From the NCBI RefSeq assembly GCF_902713615.1, contig NC_052162.1:71621686-71685685 (forward strand): a stretch of 64,000 bases of DNA, written 5' to 3'. The notes below the pieces were generated by a model. That model was not told the origin of the DNA. It ran no database searches and saw only the letters and a list, made by a program, of their open reading frames with translations. The position numbers were made by a program, and so were the translations under genes. Positions 271 through 62,899 of the stretch are shown one piece after another (positions within the stretch are counted from its first letter, which is position 1; every line of letters begins with the position of its first letter). This stretch comes from Scyliorhinus canicula (taxonomy: Eukaryota).

Positions 271-2998
271 TCAAGTCCGGCGGGGGTGGTGGTCTACAAA
301 GTAAGTCTGTCCGGTGGTCGAACTGTCCGCTGTGATCTGCGGAGCACCGGGGTTGCAGCCTCTTGTGGTGGCTGAATGGGTGTTGTGTGCTGGGGTACGA
401 TGGCGGACTCCAGGGAGGGTTGTATCCGAGGACTGGGGGTGCTGGGGGCTGGCCGGCGCGGGTGCACGGAACTGGTGGAGCGAGCTCGTGGGCTTGGGAG
501 CGCGAGGGGGCGGCTGCATGGGGTGTAGGGTGTGGGGTCCTTCTGTGGGGGTAGAAGGGGCGGGTGAAGGGGCCAGATCCCGGAGGGATACCGTGTCCTG
601 ACGGCCGTCAGGGAACTCGACGAAGGCGTACTGGGGGTTGGAGTGGAGCAGGCGCACCTTCTCAACAAGGGGGTCGGTTTTGTGTGCCCTGACGTGTTTC
701 CTCAGGAGTACCAGGCCCGGTGTCCTCAGCCATGCCGGACGTGAGACCCCCATGGTAGTGCCCCTGGAAAAAATGAAGAGCCTCTCGTGAGGGGTCTGGT
801 TGGTCGCTGTGCATAAGAGGGTCCTAATAGCGCGGAGCACGTCTGGGAGGACTTCCTGCCACTGGGAGACTTGGAGCTTTCTAGACCGGAGGGTCAGTAG
901 GATGGTCTTCCAGACCGTCGCGTTCTCCCTCTCCACCTGCCTGTTCCCCCTGGGGTTGTAGCTGGTAGTCCTGCTCGAGGCAATGCCCTTGTCGAGCAGG
1001 CACTGACGCAGCTCGATGCTCATGAAGGACGAACCCCGGTTGCTCTGCACGTAGCTGGGGAAACCAAACAGGGTGAAGACACTATGCAGGGCCCTAATGA
1101 CTGTGTGGGAGGTCATGTCGGGGCACGGGATAGCAAATGGGAAACGGGAGAACTCATCTACGACGTTTAGAAAGTAAACGTTCTTGTTAGTTGAGGGGAG
1201 TGGCCCTTTGAAATCAATTGCGAGGCGTTCAAAGGGCCTTAGACGCCTTGACCAGGTGGGTCCTGTCTGGTCTATAGAAGTGCGGTTTGCACTCCGCACA
1301 GATCGGGCAGTCCCTGGTGACCGCTTTTACCTCCTCGTTGGAGAAAGGCAGGTTTCGGGCTCTGATGTAGTGGGCGAGCTGGGTGACCCCCGGGTGGCAG
1401 AGGTCGTTGTGGATGACTTTTAGTCGGTCAATCTGCACGCTGGCGCATGTCCCGCGGGATAGGGCATCCGGGGGCTCGTTGAGCTTCCCGGGTCGATACT
1501 TAATATCGTAGCTATAGGTGGAGAGTTCGATCCTCCACTGAAGAGTTTTATCATTTTTTATTTTGCCCCTTTGCGAGTTATCAAACATAAAGGCAACCAA
1601 TCTTTGGTCTGTGATGAGGGTGAACCTCCTACCTGCGAGGTAGTGCCTCCAGTATTGAATAGCCTCCACAATGGCTTGTGCTTCTTTCTCGACTGAGGAG
1701 TGTCGGAGTTCTGAAGCGGAGAGGGTACGGGAGAAAAATGCGACTGGTCTCCATGCCTGATTTAGTGTGGCTGCTAGAGCTACCTCTGAGGCCTGGAATG
1801 GAGTGGATTCATCCACCGCCCGCATGGCCGCTTTGGCGATGTCCTGGCGTGCCTCAGCTGACAGGGGAAATCGTGTGGCCTTAAAGAGTGGGCGGGCTTT
1901 GTGCGCATATTGAGGGACCCACTGGGCGTAGTAGGAGAAGAAGCCCAAGCATCGTTTGAGGGCCTTGGGGCAATGGGGGAGGGCGAGTTCTAAGAGGGGG
2001 CGCAGACGGTCCGGGTCTGGTCCCAGGACTCCGTTTTCCACGACGTAGCTGAAGATGGCCAGTCTGTTTCTGCGAAAAACGCATTTCTCTTTGTTGTAGG
2101 TGATGTTTGATTTCTGTGCCGTCTGGAAAAAACAGTGGAGGTTGGCGTCATGGTCCTACTGGTCATAGCCGCAGATGGTGACATTGTCCAAGTACGGAAA
2201 CGTGGCCCTCAGCCCATAGTGGTCCACCATTCGGTCCATTGCTCGTTGGAACACCGAGACCCCATTAGTGACGCCGAAGGGGACACGGAGGAAATGGAAG
2301 AGGCGGCCATCGGCCTCGAATGCCGTGTAGTGGCGGTCCTCCGGGTGGATTGGGAGCTGGTGGTATGCAGAGTTCAGATCCATCGTGGAAAAGAGCCGAT
2401 ACTGGGCGATCTGATTTACCATGTCTGCAACCTTGGGGAGGGGATACGCGTCGAGGAGCGTAAATCTATTTATGGTCTGACTATAGTCGACAACCATGCG
2501 GAATTTTTCCCCGGTCTTAACGACCACCACCTGAGCTCTCCAGGGACTATTGCTGGCCTCTATAATCCCCTCACTGAGAAGCCTTCGGACCTCTGATCTG
2601 ATAAATACCCTATCCTGCAGGCTGTATCGCCTGCTATGAGTGGCTACGGGTTTACAGTCCTTTGTGAGATTGGCGAAGAGAGGAGGGGAGGAGATTCGCA
2701 GCATAGCGAGGCTGCAGATAGTGAGTGGGGGCAGAGGCGCGCCGAAGCGGAGGGTGAGACTCTTAAGGTTACACTGAAAATCTAGGCCTAATAAGAGTGG
2801 CGCGCAGAGGTCGGGCAAAACGTAGAGTTGAAATTTTGAGTAGCTCGTGCCTCGGATTGTGAGTGTCGCGGCGGTACGTCCCTGGATCTGGACAGAATGG
2901 GAGCCTGAAGCGAGCGAGATAGTTTGCCGCACGGGGAAAACGGGGAGCAAACAGCATCTTACCAGGTCTGGGTGTATGAAGCTCCATCGTGGTAGCAA
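271..2998 (-). pseudogene. pol: Gypsy pol (protease remnant, RT, RNase H, integrase), frameshifted
   Basis: RT motifs SPWRAQVVVV, RMVVDY, DLNSAYHQ, PFGVTNG, YLDN (ORF 2156-2998). RNase H motifs VAFFSRTL, EKEAQAIV, ITDQ. Integrase HHCC (HNDLCHPG..CPIC) and core IDFKGP, VVDEFSRF, QVER (ORFs 1229-2041, 271-1299). Confidence 0.95.
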
Positions 2999-3810: not shown

Positions 3811-4057
3811 GTTCTTAACATGTAGTCTGTGCTAATACAATAGCCTAATGGATTTCTTCTAATCCAACTGACTTCTTGTTTGAAGGGGACCTGGCATTAA
3901 AGTAGATTGCAATAATCCAACACACTGTTCTTATCTCACTAAACAGAATTTAATGGTCAGGAAATGGATTAATTTCTCTCCTTTCCCGATTTAAGTTGGG
4001 TGTGATGACATTGGGTCAAGTTCCAATGTCACGGAAGCTGACCATAGCAGAAATCAG

Positions 4058-4236
4058 GGGCGTGATTCTCCGTCCCTCCAGCCCCGTTTTCTGGAGCAGC
4101 ACCAGTAGTCAGATTCTCCATTCCCGCCGCCGGCCAATAGGGCTTCCCATTGGGGCCACACCAAGCCGTCAGGAAACCCCGTGGGCGTGAGTGTGCTGCC
4201 GCCGAAGCAGAGGCTCCCGCTGACGGAGAATCCCAC
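4058..4236. mobile_element. Short Harbinger-type MITE
   Basis: Inverted ends GATTCTCCGTC / GACGGAGAATC and a CAAT..CCCATTG core shared with 7845-8035, 48928-49088 and 53217-53408. Confidence 0.75.
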
Positions 4237-4299
4237 AGCAGAAATCTGACCACCTTGTATTTCAGGTCAATTATGTAGTTGTTGTGACAATGACATCAA

Positions 4300-5489: not shown

Positions 5490-6131
5490 GGGCGGGATTT
5501 TCCCTTTTGGGAACTAAGCCCCCACGCCCGCCGGAAAACGGGCGAGAATCATTCCGGACATTTTCCTCAAAGGTCTGGAGTGATTCTATGTTTTCCAGGG
5601 GGCTAGCAGGGCCCCGGCATGCGTCCCGTGGCTCTGGCTGTCGGCAGGACCCTGCTGTCCAGATTACGTGGCCTCGCATACGCACGGCAGCCGCAAGCCA
5701 GTGCGCGCATGCGCGCGGCGGCCCACTTTGGCGTGGGCATTGCCAACATGGCGGATCCACACAGTGGGTCCGCGCAGCGTAAGGTTAGTCCCTCCCAGAT
5801 TGCGATGGCTTGCCAATCAGTGACCCCCGATCGCGAGTCTGGCCACCGCTGAGGCCCCCACCGGAGTCAGATTACCCCCCGCCCCCCACCAGGACTGCTA
5901 CCGTGGCTGCGGGTCCAAGCCGCCGCCGGGTGGTACCAGATGTAAACCACGCCGGAAGGAGTTCAGTCGGTCGACCGCGGAGAATCGCCGCGGGGGCCTA
6001 TTCCAATGGCCCCCGGCAGGCGCCACATCGAATCACAGAAGCGCAGTTGCGCCAGATTTCCAGCATGAACGGCTATTCTCCACCCCCGCGCCGGGCGCGA
6101 TTCCGCCGCAGAGGGTCGGAGAATCCTGCCC
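5490..6131. mobile_element. Harbinger-type MITE (CpG-rich)
   Basis: Ends GGGCGGGATTTTCC / GGAGAATCCTGCCC; central palindrome GCGCGCATGCGCGC at 5703-5716. Confidence 0.85.
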
Positions 6132-6869
6132 CACTAATTGTCATTTGGAAATGTCACAGCATTGCAGACTCTATCAATATCTGGTAGGTTCAAATAACTC
6201 GCCTTTTGATTCTGGTAAGCAAAGAGAAAGTTTACATTCTAAATTCTGATGCAAATTAAGTAGCTTCACATGGATATGATGTGGCACTATCCAAAGAAAA
6301 TCTATTAACCAATAGAAGGGTAAGAAGGTTGAGAGAACTTGCTTGTGTCATTTTAGTGTCAAGTTGTTCTGGAACCCAGCTTACCTTAATCTTGAGCATG
6401 GAGGTCAGGAACTTCAAGTGCTGACCGTCTTTGGACTTCCCCCACATGCACAGGCTGGGAGGGCGCAACACATGCGCAATACTGTTTCTTTATTTTCTTC
6501 AGGCCCTGCATGCCTGCCCAGAGAGAGAAAAGCAGAAAGGTGCAGGAACCCAGATTAGGTGACGGAGTGCAGAATGTCATGGCCAGCAAGTGTCTCAAGG
6601 GAGGGACAAGGGAGAGGAGACAGGGAGGGGTAGCAAGAAGAATAGTCCCAGATGAGGGACAAAGATAGGAGGCAGAAACGGTAGAAGAAAAGTTCAGTTA
6701 AAAGGAAGGAGCAGAGAAACCAGCTTCAAATTAGGGAAAAGGGCTGCGGGGAGCAGACTTGTAAGTGAAGTAGGATCCAGAGAAGCCCTGAGAAGGCTAA
6801 CATAGGTTCATGACTCAGTGCTGCAGGTCAATCGCTTATGAGCGAGTCGGAGTTTCAGGCCAGGGCAAA

Positions 6870-7830
6870 GCTCCCCTTATGGAACAGTGGTATTCTGCTT
6901 GGCGCAGCCGAAGAACTAAAATTGTGCTTGTGAATTGGTTCTTGAGCAGACTCGGAAATCTTGGGGAATGGAATCTTGGGAGACGTGATTGAAACCCTGC
7001 ATTGTTGAAGCTATCCGAGTTTGAGCATCCTTTGGAGTGAATTACAAGGAGAAATCTTCGAAGGGAAGATTGAAATCCCTTGAGAGAGGGTCAGTTTCAG
7101 TGAGATTGGTTGACTCACAGTGTTACTTGCTTCTGAGTTGGTTGTTAAGAAATCTACTGATCTGTTTTGCATTCAAACATACGAAAGAGGAGCATGGGTA
7201 GATCAGTCAGCAAAGAATATAATGGCTGATCTGATTGCAATGTTAACTCCACATTCCCACCGACCCGATAACCTTTCACATCCATGCTTAGAAAAATCGA
7301 TCTAGCTCTGCCATAAAATATTCAAAGGTTAATTGACCACAGTCAATCACCCAAGGTCAGAATTGAACCCAGGTACCTGGTGCCATGAGACAGCAGTGCT
7401 AATCTCTGTGCCACCGTGTGGTGTGCATAATAGGCTCTCTCTCTGAACTCTCTGCTGTTTTATGAACACTCTCTCCTTCTGAATTCTACATTGCGTTATG
7501 GGCTCTATCTCTCTCTCTCTCTGAACTCCAAGCTTTTTTTCTGCACTCTCTCTCTCTCCCTGAACTCCATGTTGCTTTATGGGCTCTTTCTCTTGCTGAA
7601 CTTCACACATTTGGTGTGCAGTGTGGTATGTTTGAACACTGTTCGTCTGGTAATTAATAAAAATCTCATATTTACCCTGAATGTTAGGGCTACGACAGAT
7701 ATAAATTGTATTATCTTTTTGAATTAGAAAGTGTCCAGAATCTGAAACATGCCCACTTTAAACTAAACGTTATTGGTCCCTCACCAGATCTCACCAATAA
7801 CTTGGGGGTCTGGCCAAGGATCATAACAAA
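6870..7830 (+). mobile_element. Old LTR-like repeat with nested fragments and a minisatellite
   Basis: The 3' part (accctgaatgttag...ttatcttt...aacttgggggtctggccaaggatcataaca) recurs at 9210-9320, 9720-9900 and 47860-48103; ends in ACA. Confidence 0.55.
7430..7610 (+). repeat. Minisatellite, ~30-40 bp unit (gctttatgggctct(ct)n ctgaactcca)
   Basis: About 5 diverged tandem units. Confidence 0.8.
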
Positions 7831-9509: not shown

Positions 9510-9715
9510 ACTGCTGTTTTATGGGCTCTCTCAATCTCTCTGAACTCCACACTGCTTTATGGGTTCTCTCTCTCTCTCTCTCTGAACTCCACACTGCTTT
9601 ATAGGCTCTTTCTCTCTCTGTCTGAACTCCACACTGCTTTATGGGTTCTCTCTCTCTCTCTCTCTGAACTCCACACTGCTTTATGGGTTCTCTTTCTCTC
9701 TGGCTGAACTCCAGA
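9510..9715 (+). repeat. Minisatellite (ctgctttatgggttct(ct)n ctgaactccaca)
   Basis: Five well-preserved tandem units; same unit as 7430-7610. Confidence 0.88.
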
Positions 9716-12691: not shown

Positions 12692-13563
12692 GGGCAGCAC
12701 GGTGGCCTAGTGGTTAGCACAGCTGCCTCATGGCGCTGAGGTCCCAGGTTCGATCCCGGCTCTGCGTCACTGTCCGTGTGGAGTTTGCACATTCTCCCCG
12801 TGTTTGTGTGGGTTTCGCCCCCACAACCCAAAAAAATGTGGGGCGTGATTCTCCGAAAGCTGGAGAAATCGTGAGGCTGGCGTCAAAAACGGGCGGGTTT
12901 GACACCAGCCTCCGTCCCCTCGACCGGGAACCGATTCTGGTCCCCGGTCGGGGCTAGCATGCCGCGGCCGTGAACTCCGGCATCGCGGGCTTAACGAATT
13001 TCGTTAAGCCCGCTTGCCAGAGTTTGCGACGGCTGACGCGTCACATGACGTCAGCCGCGCATGCGCGGATGACGTCATCGCGCATTTGCGCGAAACCCAC
13101 GCATGCGCGGGCCGGGATGCCCCTCAGCTGCCCGCGAATGGATACAGCGGGGCGGCGGAAGGACAAAGAGTGCCGTGGTACTGCCGTGCCAATCGGTGCC
13201 ATGGTTCCCAAGATCACAACTTTACGGCCGTTTTTATGAACGGTCAGACTAGGTGTGTTTGACGTTCCTAAAAACGGTCGTAAAGGGCTTGGACTTCGGC
13301 CCATCGGCCAGCTGAGAATCGCTGCTCGCCGTAAAAAAACGGCGGGCAGCGATTCGTGTCGGGAGGCGGGCGTGGGGGGGGGGGGAGAATAGCGGGAGGG
13401 CATCAGACCAGCGTGGCCGTAAAAATTTACGACCCCCGCTATTCTCCGCACCGTCGTGAGTGCGGAGAATCGCCCCCCCGGAGTAGGTGGATTGGCCATG
13501 CTAAATTGCCCCTTAATTGGAAAAAATAATTGGGTAATCTAAATTTATTAAAAAAAAATTAAA
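12692..13563 (+). mobile_element. HE1/V-SINE short form interrupted by a MITE
   Basis: Perfect 17-bp TSD AATTTATAAATGTTTTA at 12675-12691 and 13564-13580. Confidence 0.92.
12841..13476. mobile_element. Harbinger-type MITE (CpG-rich)
   Basis: Ends GGGCGTGATTCTCCG / CGGAGAATCGCCCCC; splits the SINE body. Confidence 0.9.
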
Positions 13564-23968: not shown

Positions 23969-24594
23969 GGGCTGGATTATCCAACCCCCCGCCGGGTCGG
24001 AGAAACGCCGGGGGGCGGCATGAATCCTGCTCCCACCGGCCGCCGCATTCTCTGGCACCGTGATGGGCCGAAGTTCCGCTGCTGTGATGCTGATCCCGCC
24101 GGTGTGAATTAAACCAGCTCCCTTGCCGGTGGGACCAGGCGGCGCAGGTGGACTCTGGGGTCCTGGGGGGGGCGCGGTGCAATCTGGCCCCGGGGGGTGC
24201 CCCCACGGTGGCCTGGCCCGCCATCAGGACCCACAGATCCGGGGGCGGGCCTATGCCGTGGGGGCACTCTTTCCCTCCACGTCAGCTGTGTCAGCCTCCG
24301 CAATGGCCGACGCGGTGACCCCCCTGCACATGCACGGGGATGACGTCAGCAGTCTCTGATGCTCCCGCGCATGCGCCGACTTCCGCCTGCCGGCAGAGTC
24401 CCTTCGGCCCGGCTGGCGTGGCGCCAAAGGCCTTCCACGCCGGTCGGTCGGTGCGCAAACCACTCCGGTGAGGGGTTGACCCCTAAAGGTGCGGAGGATT
24501 CCGCACCTTTGGGGCGGCCTGACGCCGGAGTGGTTCACGCCACTCCATCCCGCCGGGTCCCCTCCACCCCGCCGGGTAGGGGAGAATCCTGCCC
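23969..24594. mobile_element. Harbinger-type MITE (CpG-rich), inside an older SINE-like repeat
   Basis: Ends GGGCTGGATTATCC / GGAGAATCCTGCCC; 3-bp TSD CAT (1-nt ambiguity at the boundary). Confidence 0.87.
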
Positions 24595-53946: not shown

Positions 53947-54587
53947 GGGCGAAATTCTCCTCAACGTCCGACGCTGTTGTGAAACCCGGAGTGTTTCAAG
54001 ACGCCGTCAGAGGCTGTTCCTCGCCCCCTATTCTCCTCCTCCCCCCCCCCCCCCCCGCCCCCCGGGGGGCTAGGAGCGGCGTTTCGTGAAACTCGGCCGC
54101 CGGACGCTGGCGGCAAGGTGGCGCGCCGATAATGACGTGGCCGGTGACGTCAGCTGCACATGCGCAGGTTTACCACCGCCAACCCGCGCATGCGCGGTTG
54201 CCGCCTTCCCCTCCGCTGCCTCCGTGGCGGCTTGATCTTTCGGGGCGGCAGAGGGGAAAGAGTGCGTCTTTTGGAGACGCTGGCCCGACGATCGGTGGGC
54301 ACTGATCGCGGGCCAGACCCCTCCCTAGCACGGCCGTGGTGCTCGATCCCCTCTCCACCCCCCACAGGCCCCAAACTTACCTTTCGCGCTATGTTCACGC
54401 CGGCAGCGACCAGGTGTGGTTGCCGCCAGCGTGAACAGGTCGGGAACGGCAGGCCGCTCGGCTCATCCGGGCCGGAGAATCGCGTTTTGCGACACGCCAT
54501 TTTGGGGGGTTGGGAGAATCGCGGGGGGTGCCAGAGCGGCCCTCCAGCAATTCTCCCACCTGGCCTGGGCAGCGGAGAATCGCGCCC
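53947..54587. mobile_element. Harbinger-type MITE (CpG-rich)
   Basis: Ends GGGCGAAATTCTCC / GGAGAATCGCGCCC; 3-bp TSD AAG. Confidence 0.92.
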
Positions 54588-57500: not shown

Positions 57501-59106
57501 GGCTGTGCCTTAGCCAGCCTAACTGTGCCACCTGAGCATCCTGACAGTATCAGGGTGGCACTGCCAAGGTGCCAAAGTGCTTGGGACCATTGTCGTTCGC
57601 TTCAAGTCCCATTGGTCATGCGCATGGACCTGACCAACATAAGAAATCCAAACCACACATGTGCGACTCTTTTCCAGCTAGCACATGCACGGGAGGCCCA
57701 AGATTCGTCAGGTTGTGGAGATGCCAACCACATAGCTGAAGACAAAGGTTAGTTTTAGTTTAATCATATGAATTTTGAATCTTTCTGAATCTTCTTTGCA
57801 GCACACTTGGGGTTTCTTCATGGCACACCTATGAGCCATGGCTACACCGTTGGAGGAGACTGGTTCTCTCTGTGCTACGACAATGGCAGGTATTGACTTC
57901 TCACTGGTGGTATAGTTCTTTGCCAATACTTCCTGACCTTTCTGATGAACACTACGTTTAGCCCTGCTCTCACCTCGCAAACCCTGACATTGCTGTTTAC
58001 TCTCAACAATTTCTCTTGTCTTAGGGTATCTCTTGGAACCACGCAGGTGTGGGCGTGGTGCTAAATGGGTGCTTTTTATTTCTGAATATTTATTCATGTG
58101 TCAAGATTGTTAACTATTGTTGTGAATCTACTCTACAGGCTGTTAAGATAGACTGTCTGTTTGCCTGCGTAAACAGCCGATGTCATCATCAATGCTCCAC
58201 GTGATCGGACTTTTAAAGTGACCATGTTCTAACTAGGAACAAACATGAATACACAACAACTCCTTCTAAATTAATCCTACAACTTCCCTCTGTGCCTCTC
58301 TTGGCATTGCCTGAATGGGTCTCTTGAGGCATGTGATGTTGTTCTATTTGTGCAGCAATCCCAATTAACCTCATCCTGCTCATCACACACATTACTTATT
58401 ACTCCCAGTGCTGATTTACTGAACGCTGCCAGTGGATTGGCTACCAATACCCCTCTCTGTATCTCTTCCCACAATACACACGCACTTGGGAACAAAGTTC
58501 TTGCATTTGTGAACTTCTTGTGGATAACCACATCTACTTCAAAGCCTTGATCAGTACTTGACTGACCTTCACTTTAATGAAGCTGCCCCACCTGGCTGTA
58601 CCTAATATGACTTGTTCTTTTCCAAACCACACTGTTGCAGTGGAGCTCTTTTCATGAAATCACAGCATGATCCATCTCTTTACTCCTCTGGCAAATTCTG
58701 TTCTGTTCAACATCCCACATTTTCCATCTGTAACATCTCTCATTTAAAATTCTTCCTCTTTGATGCTCGACCAAGTTTATCATGGAGATATCTTTTCTAC
58801 TTTCTTCCCTAAGACTTGTCACTAAGTAACTTCTCATCTTTGGTGATTTCAACCATCATTCAAGTCATCATGATCTTTCTCCTCTGAGTTTACTGCCCTT
58901 GGGCGAAATTCTCCGCGGACCGACATGACGCCTATTTCCGGCGGGAAAAAGCGGTGTGCATGACTCCGGCGTCCGGGCCTTCTTTTAAGCTGGCAATCTC
59001 CGTTCCCGGAAGGGCCAGCAGCTGACTGACGCGATACGCGTCAGTTTCACCAGCTGCGGAAGTGGTGAGACCCGGCGTTTTTTGGAGGAGGAGGAGAGAG
59101 ACAGAC

Positions 59107-59648
59107 CCGGCATTGGGGGAGGGGGGGGGGTTCCGGCATTGGGGGGGGGGTTCCGGCACGGGGGGGGGGGGTTCCGGCATTGGGGGGGGGTGTTCCGGCA
59201 TTGGGGGGGGTTCCGGCATTGGGGGGGTTCCGGCTCCGGCATTGGGGGGGGTTCCGGCATTGGGGGGGGGGGTTCCGGCATTGGGGGGGGGGGGGGGTTC
59301 CGGCATTGGGGGGGGGTTCCGGCATGGGGGGGGGGTTCCGGCATTAGGGGGGGTTCCGGCATTGGGGGGGGTTCCGGCATTGGGGGGGGGGGGTTCCGGC
59401 ATTGGGGGGGTTCCGGCATTGTGGGGGTGTTCCGGCTCCGGCATTGGGGGGGGGGTTCCGGCATTGGGGGGGGGTTCCGGCATTGGGGGGTGGGTTCCGG
59501 CATTGAGGGGGGGGGGGGTTCCGGCATTGGGGGGGGGGGGTTCCGGCATTGGGGGGGTTCTGGCATTGGGGGGGGTTCCGGCATTGGGGGGGGTTCTGGC
59601 ATTGGGGGGGGTTCCGGCATTGGGGGGGGGTTCCGGCATTGGGGGGGC
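59107..59648 (+). repeat. G-rich minisatellite (TTCCGGCATT G7-14)n
   Basis: Roughly 25-30 units. Confidence 0.97.
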
Positions 59649-59815
59649 GACTGATGCCCGGGGCCAACGCACCATCGCCCCCCCTCTGCACGCAGCTGCC
59701 CCTACCCCAACCCCCTCCCCTCACCACCCCTACCCCCTTCACCCACCCCTACCCCCCTCCAACGCCGCACCCCCCCACCCCCCACCCCCACTAACGCCGC
59801 TCCCCCCCCCACTAA

Positions 59816-60467
59816 CGGAGGAAGGAAGGGGGGGAGGAGGAAGGGGGGGAGGAGGAAGGAAGGGGGAGGAGGAAGGAAGGTGGGAGGAGGAAGGAAGGGG
59901 GGAGGAGGAAGAAAGGGGGGAGGAGGAAGGAAGGGGGGAGGAGGAAGGAGGGGGGAGGAGGAAGGAGGGGGGAGGAGGGAGGAGGGGGGAGGAGGGAGGA
60001 GGGGGAGGAGGAAGGAGGGGGGAGGAGGAAGGAGGGGGGAGGAGGAAGGAGGGGGGAGGAGGAAGGAGGGGGAGGAGGAAGGGGGGGAGGAGGAAGGAAG
60101 GGGGGAGGAGGAAGGAGGGGGGACGGAGGAAGGAAGGGGGGGAGGAGGAAGAAGGGGGGAGGAGGAAGAAGGGGGGAGGAGGAAGGAAGGGGGGAGGAGG
60201 AAGGAAGGGGGAGGAGGAAGGAAGGGGGGAGGAGGAAGGAGAGGGGGGGGAGGAGGAAGGAGAGGGGGGGAGGAGGAAGGAGGGGGGGAGGAGGAAGGAG
60301 GGGGGTAGGAAGGAGGGGGGGAGGAGGAAGGAGGGGGGAGGAGGAAGGGGGGGAGGAGGAAGGAGGGGGGAGGAGGAAGGGGGGGAGGAGGGAGGGCGGG
60401 GAGGAGGAGGGAGGAGGAGGGAGGAGGGGGGAGGAGGAAGGAAGGGGGGGAGGAGGAGAGAGGGGGG
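59816..60467 (+). repeat. Polypurine (GGA/GGAA) tract
   Basis: ~650 bp almost entirely A and G. Confidence 0.97.
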
Positions 60468-60825
60468 TGTGTGGGTACCGGCCTTCAGAGGGAGGGGGAC
60501 GGGGGGTGGGTACCGGCCTTCAGAGGGAGGGGGACGGGGTGTGGGTACCGGCGTTGAGGGGGGGGGGGTTGCGGCGTTGAGGGTGGGGGGTTGCGGCATT
60601 GCGAGAGATGGGGGGCGGCGTTGGAGGGGGGTAGGGGTGGTGGGGAGGGGGGTAGGGGTGGGGAGGGGGGTAGGGGTGGGGAGGGGGGTAGGGGCGTTGG
60701 AGGGAGGGAGGGGTGGTGAGGGGGGTGGTTGGGGTAGGGTGGCAGCGGCGTACAGAGGGGGGGGGCCGACGGTGCGTTGGCCCAGGGCATCCGTAGCCCC
60801 CCCTCCCTGCACGCCGCTGCCCCCA

Positions 60826-61866
60826 AAACCCCCCCCCCCCCCGATGCCGCAACCCCCCCCCCCGATGCCGCCAACCCCCCCCCCCGATGCCCCCCCCGGA
60901 TGCCGCAACCCCCCGGATGCCGCAACCCACCCCCCGGATGCCGCAACCCACCCCACGGATGCCGCAACCCACCCCCCGATGCCGCAACCCACCCCCCGGA
61001 TGCCGCAACCCCCCCCCCGATGCCCCCCCCCCCCCCGATGCCGCAACCCACCCCCCGGATGCCGCAACCCACCGGATGCCGCAACCCACCCCCCGATGCC
61101 GCAACCCACCCCCCGATGCCGCAACCCACCCCCCCGATGCCGCAACCCACCCCCGGATGCCGCAACCCACCCCCCCCGATGCCGCAACCCACCCCCCCGA
61201 TGCCGCAACCCACCCCCCGATGCCGCAACCCACCCTCCCCCCGATGCCACAACCCACCCCCCCCCCCGATGCCGCAACCCCCCCCCCGATGCCCCCCCCG
61301 GATGCCGCAACCCCCCCGATGCCGCAACCCACCCCCCGGATGCCGCAACCCACCCCCCGGATGCCGCAACCCACCCCCCGATGCCGCAACCCACCCCCCG
61401 GATGCCGCAACCCCCCCCCCCCGAATTGCCCCCCCCCCCCCCCCCCCCGATGCCGCAACCCACCCCCCGGATGCCGCAACCCACCGGATGCCGCAACCCA
61501 CCCCCCGATGCCGCAACCCACCCCCCGATGCCGCAACCCACCCCCCGATGCCGCAACCCACCCCCGGATGCCGCAACCCACCCCCCCGATGCCGCAACCC
61601 ACCCCCCCGTGCCGCAACCCCCCCCCCCGATGCCGCAACCCACCCTCCCCCCGATGCCACAAACCCACCCCACCCCCCGATGCCGCAACCCACCCCCCCG
61701 ATGCCGCAACCCACCCCCCTGATGCCGCAACCCCACCCCCCCATGCCGCAACCCCCTCCCCCCCCATGCCGCAACCCCCCCCCATGCCGCAACCCCCCCC
61801 CCCATGCGGCAACCCCCCCCCCGATGCCGCAACCCCCCCCCCCCCGATGCCGCAACCCACCCCCCG
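60826..61866 (+). repeat. C-rich minisatellite (GATGCCGCAACCCA C5-8)n
   Basis: Roughly 50 units; its reverse complement resembles the 59107-59648 unit. Confidence 0.97.
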
Positions 61867-62899
61867 ACACTGAACGGCGTCAACCATCATCAATGGTTGA
61901 CGCCGTTTTAAAGCAACTGTGATTTTCGCGAACGTGACCCGTGGCCACGTCGGCGGGACTTTGGCCCATCCGGGCCAGAGATTTGTGGACACTAAAAAAA
62001 AAATGAAATCCCGCCGGCGCCAGCTGTTTTCAGAGGCTGCCGGCGGGATTTGCACAACGCCGGTTTTTGGCCGGTGGGAAATTTAAAAACCCTGCGGGAG
62101 CGGAAATAACGCCGCTGCCCGCCGATTCTCCGACCCTGCGTGGGGTCGGAGAATCCCGCCCCTTGTTTCCTTCCTAAACCTCCACGTCCATATAAACTCA
62201 CCTATCCATCTCAACTTTGCAATATCACCTGGCTTTGCTATTCCAATCGTGGTAGTCACAGGTAAAGCCCTCTTTGTATCCCTCGCTCAACTCGGATTCC
62301 CCTTCCCAATCCCAAACCCATTTCCTTCTGTGTCGACCTCTAAAAAACTCTCCCTCAAGCCACATATAATTAGAATTTCAAATTCCCAACTGTCCAACCA
62401 TTGGCCTTCCATTCATCATGACGTTTCTGCAGCTATGGATCTGCTCAATCTCATCCTTACTTTCACCTTTGATTCCTTTATTCTCATTAAAACCAGTAGT
62501 TTATTTCTCACCCTGATTATCCTCCATTGTATGGTTTTTATGCCCAATCCCTTAATCCCAAGAGATGCAGACTTGACTCTCTATAGCAGACAGTCGACTT
62601 AAACATTCATTGTTACATCTTGCCGGACTACATGATGCTCTATTGGACCCTGCTCTCCATTTCCAAACTTGTATGCTGTTCAAAGATCATCCAACAGTGC
62701 AAGTATACCTTCGGTTTCACATCTCAACTGCCTCTTCCATTCCACCTCTAATAACAAGTGCAAGAAGCTCAAGAATCACTTCATAAATTGGTTTCAACTT
62801 TAGTCTCTGGGTTTAAGACATCAGATGAACTCCTTCAAAGTATTGTCTTGTACCAGACCCTTGGCTATCTTCTATTTTGTTGTCTTTCATTTATTCATG

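What the first reader, a model, noticed from the sequence alone, without database searches (positions are those of the whole stretch)
58901..62161. Foldback-like giant palindrome inside Harbinger termini: mirrored minisatellite arms around a polypurine core
Seen: Harbinger-type TIRs and a CTT TSD enclose, in order, array A (GGTTCCGGCATTGGGG)n, a unique segment (~59645-59765), a 650-bp A/G core, an inverted copy of the unique segment (~60620-60802, which is why VRWPRASVAPP appears in ORFs on both strands), and array B, whose reverse complement is (GGTTGCGGCATCGGGG)n. The arms differ by nearly fixed substitutions within each array, so they were homogenised or expanded separately after the inversion. 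Known: Drosophila FB and sea-urchin TU foldback elements have inverted arms made of outer tandem and inner unique domains. Inference: this may be a foldback-type family mobilised by a Harbinger transposase that spreads expandable G4/i-motif minisatellites.
Basis: partly seen in the sequence, partly recalled or inferred. Interest (0 to 1): 0.75.

Follow-up and report, generated by a model that had tools for sequence, protein, structure and literature searches.

The report
Transposon copy with mirrored minisatellite arms
One copy of a common, non-coding cut-and-paste transposon in a catshark genome has grown a 2.8-kb interior of two opposed G-rich repeat arrays around a purine tract; the structure is real and apparently self-derived, but nothing here shows it is a mobile "foldback" family.

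Summary
Window 58901-62161 (3261 bp) is bounded by a 13/15 inverted terminus and a CTT/CTT duplication. Inside lie array A (about 27 units, + orientation), segment U, a 644-bp 99%-purine core, six more + units, U' (an inverted copy of U, 84% identical) and array B (about 50 units, - orientation).

The arms differ by fixed changes: TTCCGGCATT in A, TTGCGGCATC in B. Array B also holds a 99%-identical internal duplication of about 410 bp. That argues against a simple palindromic assembly artefact and shows each arm evolved on its own.

New here: every internal unit is a variant of one motif. That motif grades into native transposon sequence at both edges and matches the arms of a native perfect hairpin abutting array B. 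So the interior most likely grew from the element's own hairpin module.

It is not a true foldback element. The outer 200 and 294 bp are not inverted repeats, and the TSD is 3 bp. Five other copies with these termini in the window carry no arrays.

An unchecked first-reader note (s1-195963) reports a similar element on another piece of this genome.

The parts
58898..58900 (.). Left copy of the 3-bp target-site duplication, CTT
   Evidence: Sequence. It matches 62162-62164. The chance of a 3/3 match is 1/64.
58901..58915 (+). Left terminal inverted repeat, GGGCGAAATTCTCCG
   Evidence: It matches the right end at 13/15. The motif is shared with at least 5 other elements in the window.
58901..59100 (+). 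Left unique domain of the transposon. It is CpG-rich (observed/expected 1.13) and contains hairpins, for example at 59020-59055.
   Evidence: dG -13.6, z -5.0. It is not an inverted copy of the right unique domain.
59064..59130 (+). Native unit (ACCCGGCGTT followed by a purine tract) and a proto-unit (ACCCGGCATT followed by G/A). Together they grade into array A.
   Evidence: Alignment; motif map.
59101..59647 (+). Array A: about 27 units of TTCCGGCATT plus a run of 5-15 G. It is G-rich on the + strand and has a higher-order repeat of about 205-222 bp.
59641..59808 (+). Inner unique segment U. It is C-rich and its inner end holds two units in - orientation (AACGCCGC).
59817..60460 (+). Middle domain: a polypurine core, 17-bp unit GGAGGAAGGAAGGGGGA repeated about 37 times, 99% purine.
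60461..60612 (+). Three 35-bp units and three 22-bp units of the same motif in + orientation. They form the series TACCGGCCTT, TACCGGCGTT, TTGCGGCGTT, TTGCGGCATT.
60613..60803 (-). U', the inverted copy of U. The local alignment covers 60626-60803; the stretch from 60613 adds a mirrored partial unit seen by eye.
   Evidence: 84% identity over 167 ungapped columns, score 89 against shuffles 24.9 +/- 3.4.
60742..60820 (.). Nested hairpin at the U'/array B junction. A 39-bp stretch present only in this arm folds back on part of U'.
   Evidence: dG -35.3, z -5.6; extra block in U'.
60833..61867 (-). Array B: about 50 units. Read on the - strand the unit is (TGGG)TTGCGGCATC(C) plus a run of 5-20 G. 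It is C-rich on the + strand.
60866..61702 (.). Recent internal duplication within array B: 60866-61290 against 61270-61702, 99% identical outside homopolymer gaps.
61873..61907 (.). Native perfect hairpin with 15-bp stems. Its arms (TTGACGCCGTT) are a variant of the array unit. Array B abuts its left arm in the same orientation.
   Evidence: dG -19.2, z -8.6.
61868..62161 (+). Right unique domain of the transposon. CpG observed/expected is 1.24 and it is a chain of hairpins.
   Evidence: 61990-62085: dG -28.7, z -5.2. Its last 66-71 bp match another family copy at 23969-24039 at 77-79%.
62124..62155 (.). Subterminal hairpin with 14-bp stems. It contains the right terminus motif, so the terminus motif occurs three times in the element.
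   Evidence: dG -15.6, z -5.5.
62147..62161 (-). Right terminal inverted repeat. It reads CGGAGAATCCCGCCC on the + strand.
62162..62164 (.). Right copy of the target-site duplication, CTT
   Evidence: Sequence.

Best explanation
This is one copy of the abundant, non-coding, hairpin-rich cut-and-paste transposon family of this genome. The family is Harbinger-like: a 15-bp terminus and a 3-bp duplication.

Its interior has turned into a nested palindrome of minisatellites that derive from the element's own sequence. The building block is a short native motif (GGGT-nn-CGGC-n-TT followed by a G or purine run). This motif also forms the arms of a native hairpin at 61873-61907.

Inferred steps:
1. 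The motif was duplicated in tandem.
2. A block made of units plus segment U was copied once in inverted orientation, by fold-back or template switching at a hairpin or a stalled fork.
3. Each arm then expanded and was homogenised on its own by replication slippage and unequal exchange. The purine spacer grew into the 644-bp core.

At least the latest growth (the 99%-identical ~410-bp duplication in B) is far younger than the inverted duplication (U and U' differ by 16%). I take it to have happened at this locus.

The arrays encode nothing and need no transposase. Their expected effects are structural: cruciform or hairpin, G-quadruplex/i-motif and triplex potential, and hence instability.

Shown: the anatomy, the unit homology, the arm-specific fixation, and the fold-back potential. 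Inferred: the order of events, the mechanisms, and that most growth was local rather than inherited from a mobile progenitor. I put about 60:40 on local growth.
For: - Boundaries and family: the terminus motif occurs 11 times against 0.23 expected, there is a CTT/CTT duplication, and other copies lie at 4059-4237, 5491-6130, 12842-13476 and 23969-24593.
- All internal units align to one motif with invariant C, G, C and T columns. They form graded series: native ACCCGGCGTT, then ACCCGGCATT, then array A on the left; TACCGGCCTT, TACCGGCGTT, TTGCGGCGTT, TTGCGGCATT on the right, then array B. TTGCGGCATT is one substitution away from both the A and the B unit.
- Array B abuts a perfect native hairpin whose arms carry the same motif.
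- The purine tract plus unit at 59085-59114 recurs at the right edge of the core.
- U and U' are inverted copies at 84% identity.
- Arm-specific variants are fixed, each arm has its own higher-order repeat, and B has a 99%-identical internal duplication.
- No arrays occur in the other family copies or anywhere else in the 64 kb.
- The long ORFs are repeat translations with no Pfam match and no relatives by the word search.
- The single-strand fold pairs 462 of the 547 bases of A with B.
Against: - Only one copy could be examined, so 'local growth' against 'inherited from an array-bearing master copy' is not decided.
- An unchecked first-reader note (s1-195963) describes a similar 2.3-kb element elsewhere in the genome. 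That would favour a family trait or a recurrent process.
- The unit is short and G/C-rich, so part of its resemblance to native sequence could be convergence on low-complexity sequence.
- The other family copies in the window are only 42-55% identical to this one. No close 'unexpanded' relative was available to show the ancestral state.
- No reads were available to confirm the assembly.
Confidence: 0.55

Rival explanations
1. This is a member of a multi-copy, foldback-like subfamily. The opposed arrays were already present in the transposing progenitor, and a Harbinger transposase moves them around the genome. Unit numbers vary between copies.
For: - Intact terminus and a perfect 3-bp duplication around the whole 3.26 kb.
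- The size is within the range of autonomous Harbinger elements, about 4.1 kb on average (PMC4482050).
- The modular layout parallels Tetris, FB and TU elements (PMC4079207).
- An unchecked note, s1-195963, reports another 'foldback Harbinger-type element with two opposed G-run minisatellite arrays' in this genome.
- Other notes report opposed G-rich arrays near histone and MHC loci.
Against: - No second copy was seen. None of the five other elements with these termini in the window has arrays.
- The units grade into native sequence at both array edges, and array B contains a 99%-identical duplication. Both point to at least partly local, recent growth.
- The outer 200 and 294 bp are not inverted repeats.
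- No transposase gene was found in the window.
- The earlier notes are unchecked and may concern other motifs or other subfamilies.
Confidence: 0.3
2. There are two elements. An independent foldback-type element, whose arms are tandem repeats right up to its ends (about 59103-61862), inserted into an ordinary copy of the transposon.
For: The arrays reach both inner boundaries. A 4-bp GACA lies at both junctions (59099-59102 and 61866-61869; sequence).
Against: - A 4-bp match with free positioning is weak evidence.
- The sequence just outside both junctions already carries the unit motif: native ACCCGGCGTT at 59070 and the hairpin arms at 61873-61907. That is expected for birth in place, not for an insertion.
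- No such arrays occur elsewhere in the window.
Confidence: 0.07
3. Assembly artefact. A chimeric or palindromic long read, or a collapse or expansion in a hard-to-sequence G-rich array, created the mirrored structure.
For: - If the window comes from sScyCan1.1, that assembly was built from PacBio CLR reads with Falcon-unzip (PMC11979771). CLR reads are error-prone in homopolymers and can hold missed-adapter palindromes.
- The G-run lengths vary widely.
- The 99%-identical ~410-bp duplication could be a mis-join.
- No reads could be laid on the region.
Against: - An artefactual palindrome would have arms that are the same apart from random errors. Here the arms differ by fixed substitutions in every unit (about 27 A units, about 50 B units) and by an extra TGGG in most B units. 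They also differ in length (547 against 1035 bp), in higher-order structure, and by 16% between U and U'.
- The structure lies inside a contig and has clean transposon ends and a clean duplication.
Confidence: 0.06

Closest known systems
Tetris, a foldback-type element of Drosophila virilis (PMC4079207); also the classical FB (Drosophila) and TU (sea urchin) elements
   Same: The modular order is the same: flanking domain, outer domain of tandem repeats, inner unique domain, then a non-coding middle domain, all mirrored on the other side. Repeat number differs between arms. The element is non-autonomous. It is a source of satellite-like arrays.
   Different: - In Tetris, FB and TU the whole arm, including the flanking domain, is a long terminal inverted repeat. 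Here only 15 bp at the tips are inverted, and the outer 200 and 294 bp are unrelated to each other.
- Tetris has a TSD of 8-10 bp and a suggested Mutator affinity. Here the TSD is 3 bp.
- Tetris units are about 220 bp. Here they are 18-21 bp with G-runs.
- Tetris is known from several copies. Here only one copy was seen.
Galileo (P superfamily), and the idea that foldback structure evolves independently in several superfamilies (Marzo et al. 2008, as cited in PMC4079207; PMC3688188)
   Same: A cut-and-paste element of an ordinary superfamily that has acquired long, repeat-containing inverted arms.
   Different: Galileo's arms are true long TIRs, carry transposase binding sites and are a family-wide trait. 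None of this is shown here.
MITE-borne tandem repeats: Xenopus Xmix/Xstir and miDNA4, bivalve pearl/CvA, DINE-1 central tandem repeats (review PMC9659126)
   Same: A short internal motif of a non-autonomous DNA transposon is amplified into tandem arrays inside the element. The arrays then evolve by slippage and unequal exchange.
   Different: As summarised in that review, those cases involve a tandem-repeat motif amplified within the element. Here two homologous arrays face each other around a mirrored unique segment and a purine core.
The catshark 'hairpin-chain' Harbinger-type MITE family, noted earlier in this scan (s1-223462, s1-198251, s1-203737)
   Same: The same kind of terminus, a CpG-rich body, and unique domains made of successive hairpins.
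   Different: Those copies are 620-735 bp with no arrays. This copy is 3261 bp and 2.8 kb of it is repeat.

Membership tests
PIF/Harbinger (PHIS) non-autonomous element | 3-bp target-site duplication | tested here: met
   CTT at 58898-58900 and at 62162-62164. This is a single copy, so the chance is 1/64. The other, older copies in the window show no clean duplication.
PIF/Harbinger (PHIS) non-autonomous element | Target consensus TWA, or ANT, CWG or TNA in the other PHIS groups | tested here: not met
   CTT fits none of the consensuses listed in PMC4482050. An earlier scan note (s1-216922) reports variable 3-bp duplications for this family.
PIF/Harbinger (PHIS) non-autonomous element | Short terminal inverted repeats (most under 60 bp) that start with G or A | tested here: met
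   15-bp terminus, 13/15 match, starting GGGCG. Criterion from PMC4482050.
PIF/Harbinger (PHIS) non-autonomous element | Termini shared with an autonomous element that encodes a DDE transposase and a Myb-like protein | not testable with these tools
   No transposase lies in the window. The only Pfam hits are retrotransposon pol domains at 271-2998. The genome could not be searched.
Foldback elements (FB, TU, Tetris type) | Long terminal inverted repeats that run from the element's very ends and make up most of it | tested here: not met
   58901-59100 and 61868-62161 share only the 15-bp tips; the best other local match is 23 bp. The mirrored arms are internal (59101-59808 and 60613-61867).
Foldback elements (FB, TU, Tetris type) | Arms built of an outer tandem-repeat domain and an inner unique domain around a middle domain | tested here: met
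   The order is A, U, core plus six units, U', B. The single-strand fold pairs A with B.
Foldback elements (FB, TU, Tetris type) | TSD of about 8-10 bp (Tetris; suggested Mutator affinity) | tested here: not met
   The duplication is 3 bp, against 8-10 bp in PMC4079207.
Foldback elements (FB, TU, Tetris type) | Several genomic copies with the same ends and variable repeat number | not testable with these tools
The protein word searches and the metagenome scans were blank. The only lead is the unchecked note s1-195963.

The most novel reading that the evidence does not exclude
The hairpin modules of this catshark transposon family are seeds for palindromic amplification. Array-bearing derivatives such as this one would still be mobilised by a Harbinger transposase. 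A foldback-like lineage would then have arisen inside the PIF/Harbinger superfamily and would scatter opposed G-quadruplex/i-motif minisatellite pairs across the genome. These might include the opposed G-rich arrays that other first-reader notes report near histone and MHC class II genes.
Probability: 0.2. Interest if true: 0.6.

Novelty: new variant of a known kind. Interest (0 to 1): 0.33.

Why it matters
If this is only a one-off, it is a clean worked example of how a transposon's own hairpin motif can grow into a kilobase-scale palindrome of minisatellites. The intermediate units are still visible at the array edges.

If such copies are mobile and numerous, it would add PIF/Harbinger to the superfamilies that have evolved a foldback-like form independently. 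It would also give a source for paired G-rich arrays that can form cruciforms, G-quadruplexes and triplexes. Structures of that kind are associated with replication stalling, breakage and rearrangement.

Tried and rejected
- Fetching other copies through repeat-derived ORFs: the search for homologous proteins with the right-end ORF and with the array A/U ORF found nothing. This says little, because such ORFs are unlikely to be in that collection.
- Two exact-pattern scans of metagenome contigs for two-unit patterns of A and of B returned 0, as expected for a vertebrate repeat.
- The search of earlier findings by sequence was blank.
- A paralogous empty site was sought by blasting the flanks and the joined flanks against the rest of the window; there were no hits.
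- Coding function was rejected. The 886- and 714-aa ORFs are translations of the repeats and have no Pfam match.
- Rfam and tRNA scans of the window found nothing.
- Homology between the array site and a long hairpin in the copy at 12842-13476 was considered, but the family copies are too diverged (42-55% identity) to align the interior reliably. I dropped it.
- A literature search for the terminus string found no paper.
- One whole-element fold attempt timed out and then succeeded.
Full report
**What is there.** The sequence shows a 3261-bp, 71-77% G+C block at 58901-62161. Its flanks are about 42% G+C and CpG-poor.
- The block starts GGGCGAAATTCTCCG and ends with the complement of GGGCGGGATTCTCCG, a 13/15 match.
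- It is flanked by CTT on both sides (58898-58900 and 62162-62164).
- The terminus motif is a family signal. With up to 2 mismatches it occurs 11 times in the window against 0.23 expected.
- It pairs up into other elements at 4059-4237, 5491-6130, 12842-13476 and 23969-24593, with a further right end at 54573-54586.
- Earlier notes of this scan identify the genome as a catshark and this family as an abundant 'Harbinger-type' hairpin-chain MITE. I did not verify the species.

**Anatomy, left to right.**
- Left unique domain: 58901-59100.
- Array A: 59101-59647, about 27 units of TTCCGGCATT plus a run of 5-15 G.
- Segment U: 59641-59808, C-rich.
- Purine core: 59817-60460, a 17-bp unit repeated about 37 times, 99% G+A.
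- Middle units: three 35-bp and three 22-bp units in + orientation, 60461-60612.
- U': 60613-60803.
- Array B: 60833-61867, about 50 units. On the - strand the unit reads (TGGG)TTGCGGCATC(C) plus a run of 5-20 G.
- Right unique domain: 61868-62161.

- U and the reverse complement of U' align at 84% over 167 ungapped columns. The score is 89 against 24.9 +/- 3.4 for shuffles.

**Arms evolved separately.**
- Every A unit has TTCCGG and every B unit has TTGCGG. A ends in CATT and B in CATC.
- Most B units carry a TGGG interruption of the G-run that A lacks.
- B contains an internal duplication of about 410 bp (60866-61290 against 61270-61702) that is 99% identical outside homopolymer gaps. A has its own repeat of about 205-222 bp.
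- U and U' differ by 16%, so the arrays are much more homogeneous than the arms are old. They have therefore been expanding or homogenising long after the inversion.

**Where the repeats came from (new here).** An alignment of 15 representative units shows that all of them share one motif, GGGT-nn-CGGC-n-TT followed by a G or purine run.
- The aligned units came from both arrays, the 35-bp and 22-bp units, the two inverted units at the inner end of U, the sequence just outside array A, and both arms of a native hairpin.
- On the left, native ACCCGGCGTT (59070) is followed by ACCCGGCATT (59105) and then by the A units.
- On the right of the core the series runs TACCGGCCTT, TACCGGCGTT, TTGCGGCGTT, TTGCGGCATT (60473-60600). 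The last is one substitution from both the A and the B unit, so it is a plausible ancestral form.
- Array B runs directly into a perfect native hairpin with 15-bp stems (61873-61907; dG -19.2, z -8.6). Its arms, TTGACGCCGTT, are the same motif, and the left arm has the same orientation as B.
- The purine tract next to the native left unit (GGAGGAGGAG...AGAG) recurs at the right edge of the core, again followed by a unit. This hints that the core grew from that spacer. The evidence is low-complexity and therefore weak.

Repeat units that grade into flanking native sequence are what one expects from birth in place, not from insertion of a foreign element.

**Not a true foldback element.**
- The two outer domains are not inverted copies of each other; the best local match is 23 bp. 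Only the 15-bp tips are inverted.
- Both outer domains are chains of strong hairpins (z -5.0 to -8.6), like the family described in earlier notes.
- The right terminus is itself half of a 14-bp-stem hairpin (62124-62155).
- The layout nevertheless mirrors the domain order of Tetris: flanking domain, tandem outer domain, inner domain, middle domain (PMC4079207).
- As a single DNA strand the element folds with 462 of the 547 bases of A paired to B (MFE -1028 kcal/mol with DNA parameters). G-runs can pair with C-runs in any register, so this shows potential only.

**Superfamily.**
- A 3-bp duplication and a short G-initial terminus fit PIF/Harbinger.
- CTT fits none of the PHIS target consensuses (PMC4482050).
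- No transposase is in the window. The only Pfam hits are retrotransposon RT, RNase H and integrase at 271-2998.

'Harbinger-like' is therefore a reasonable label but not a demonstrated one.

**Artefact?** If the window is from sScyCan1.1, the assembly rests on PacBio CLR reads (PMC11979771).
- Exact G-run lengths should then not be trusted.
- The 99%-identical duplication in B also deserves read support.
- A missed-adapter palindrome cannot explain arms that differ by fixed substitutions in every unit, by length (547 against 1035 bp), by higher-order structure, and by 16% in U and U'.

I put an artefact at about 6%.

**Family or one-off?** This is the point I could not settle.
- ORF-based searches and metagenome scans were blank.
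- There is no paralogous empty site in the window.
- Within the window, none of the other family copies has arrays, and no similar array exists elsewhere. Those copies are only 42-55% identical to this one, so they are other subfamilies.
- The scan's notebook holds an unchecked first-reader note (s1-195963) of a 2.3-kb 'foldback Harbinger-type element with two opposed, homologous G-run minisatellite arrays around nested hairpins' on another piece of this genome.
- Other notes report opposed G-rich arrays at a histone locus (followed up as a segmental duplication) and around an MHC II exon.

These are leads, not evidence. They could mean a mobile subfamily. They could equally mean that this genome's hairpin-rich transposons repeatedly generate such structures.

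**Verdict.**
- The best-supported explanation is a transposon copy whose own hairpin motif was amplified, inverted once and then expanded separately in each arm by ordinary replication and repair errors. Part of this growth was recent and local.
- The stronger claim of a Harbinger-mobilised foldback family remains possible (about 0.3) but untested.
- The phenomenon belongs to known kinds: transposon-borne tandem repeats, and foldback-like architecture evolving within ordinary superfamilies (PMC9659126, PMC4079207).
- Its particular form is new: opposed arrays inside short-TIR, non-inverted outer domains.

Noticed in passing
window 271-2998 (- strand): Three adjoining ORFs carry integrase core (rve), RNase H and reverse-transcriptase domains. 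This is a fragmented pol region of an LTR retrotransposon, probably Ty3/gypsy-like. I describe it only and did not reconstruct it.
   Followed up: partly
window 4059-4237, 5491-6130, 12842-13476, 23969-24593, right end at 54573-54586: These are other elements with the same GGGCGnGATTCTCCG-type termini. They are only 42-55% identical to each other internally, so they are several subfamilies. None shows a clean 3-bp duplication.
   Followed up: partly
window 58901-59100, 61868-62161, 12841-13478, 5490-6133: These transposon copies keep CpG at observed/expected 0.9-1.24, while the flanking DNA is at 0.16-0.45. They are either young or escape methylation-driven CpG decay. Earlier scan notes mention NRF1/CRE-type motifs in this family.
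   Followed up: no
window 62124-62155: The right terminus is half of a 14-bp-stem hairpin. The terminus motif therefore occurs three times per element: once at the left end and twice, inverted, at the right end. The same arrangement is visible in the copies at 12842-13476 and 5491-6130.
   Followed up: partly
window 4048-4058 and 4238-4247: The short 179-bp copy is flanked by an almost identical 10-bp stretch (AGCAGAAATC) on both sides. This is far longer than a 3-bp duplication. It may be an insertion into a repeat, a deletion derivative, or chance.
   Followed up: no
window 7435-7593 and 9514-9713: Two related CT-rich tandem repeats with periods of 42 and 81-82 bp, sharing the motif GAACTCCACACTGCTTTATGGG. 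They lie 2 kb apart.
   Followed up: no
window 60866-61702: The ~410-bp duplication inside array B is 99% identical. It is either a very recent unequal exchange or a local assembly duplication, and it needs read support.
   Followed up: partly
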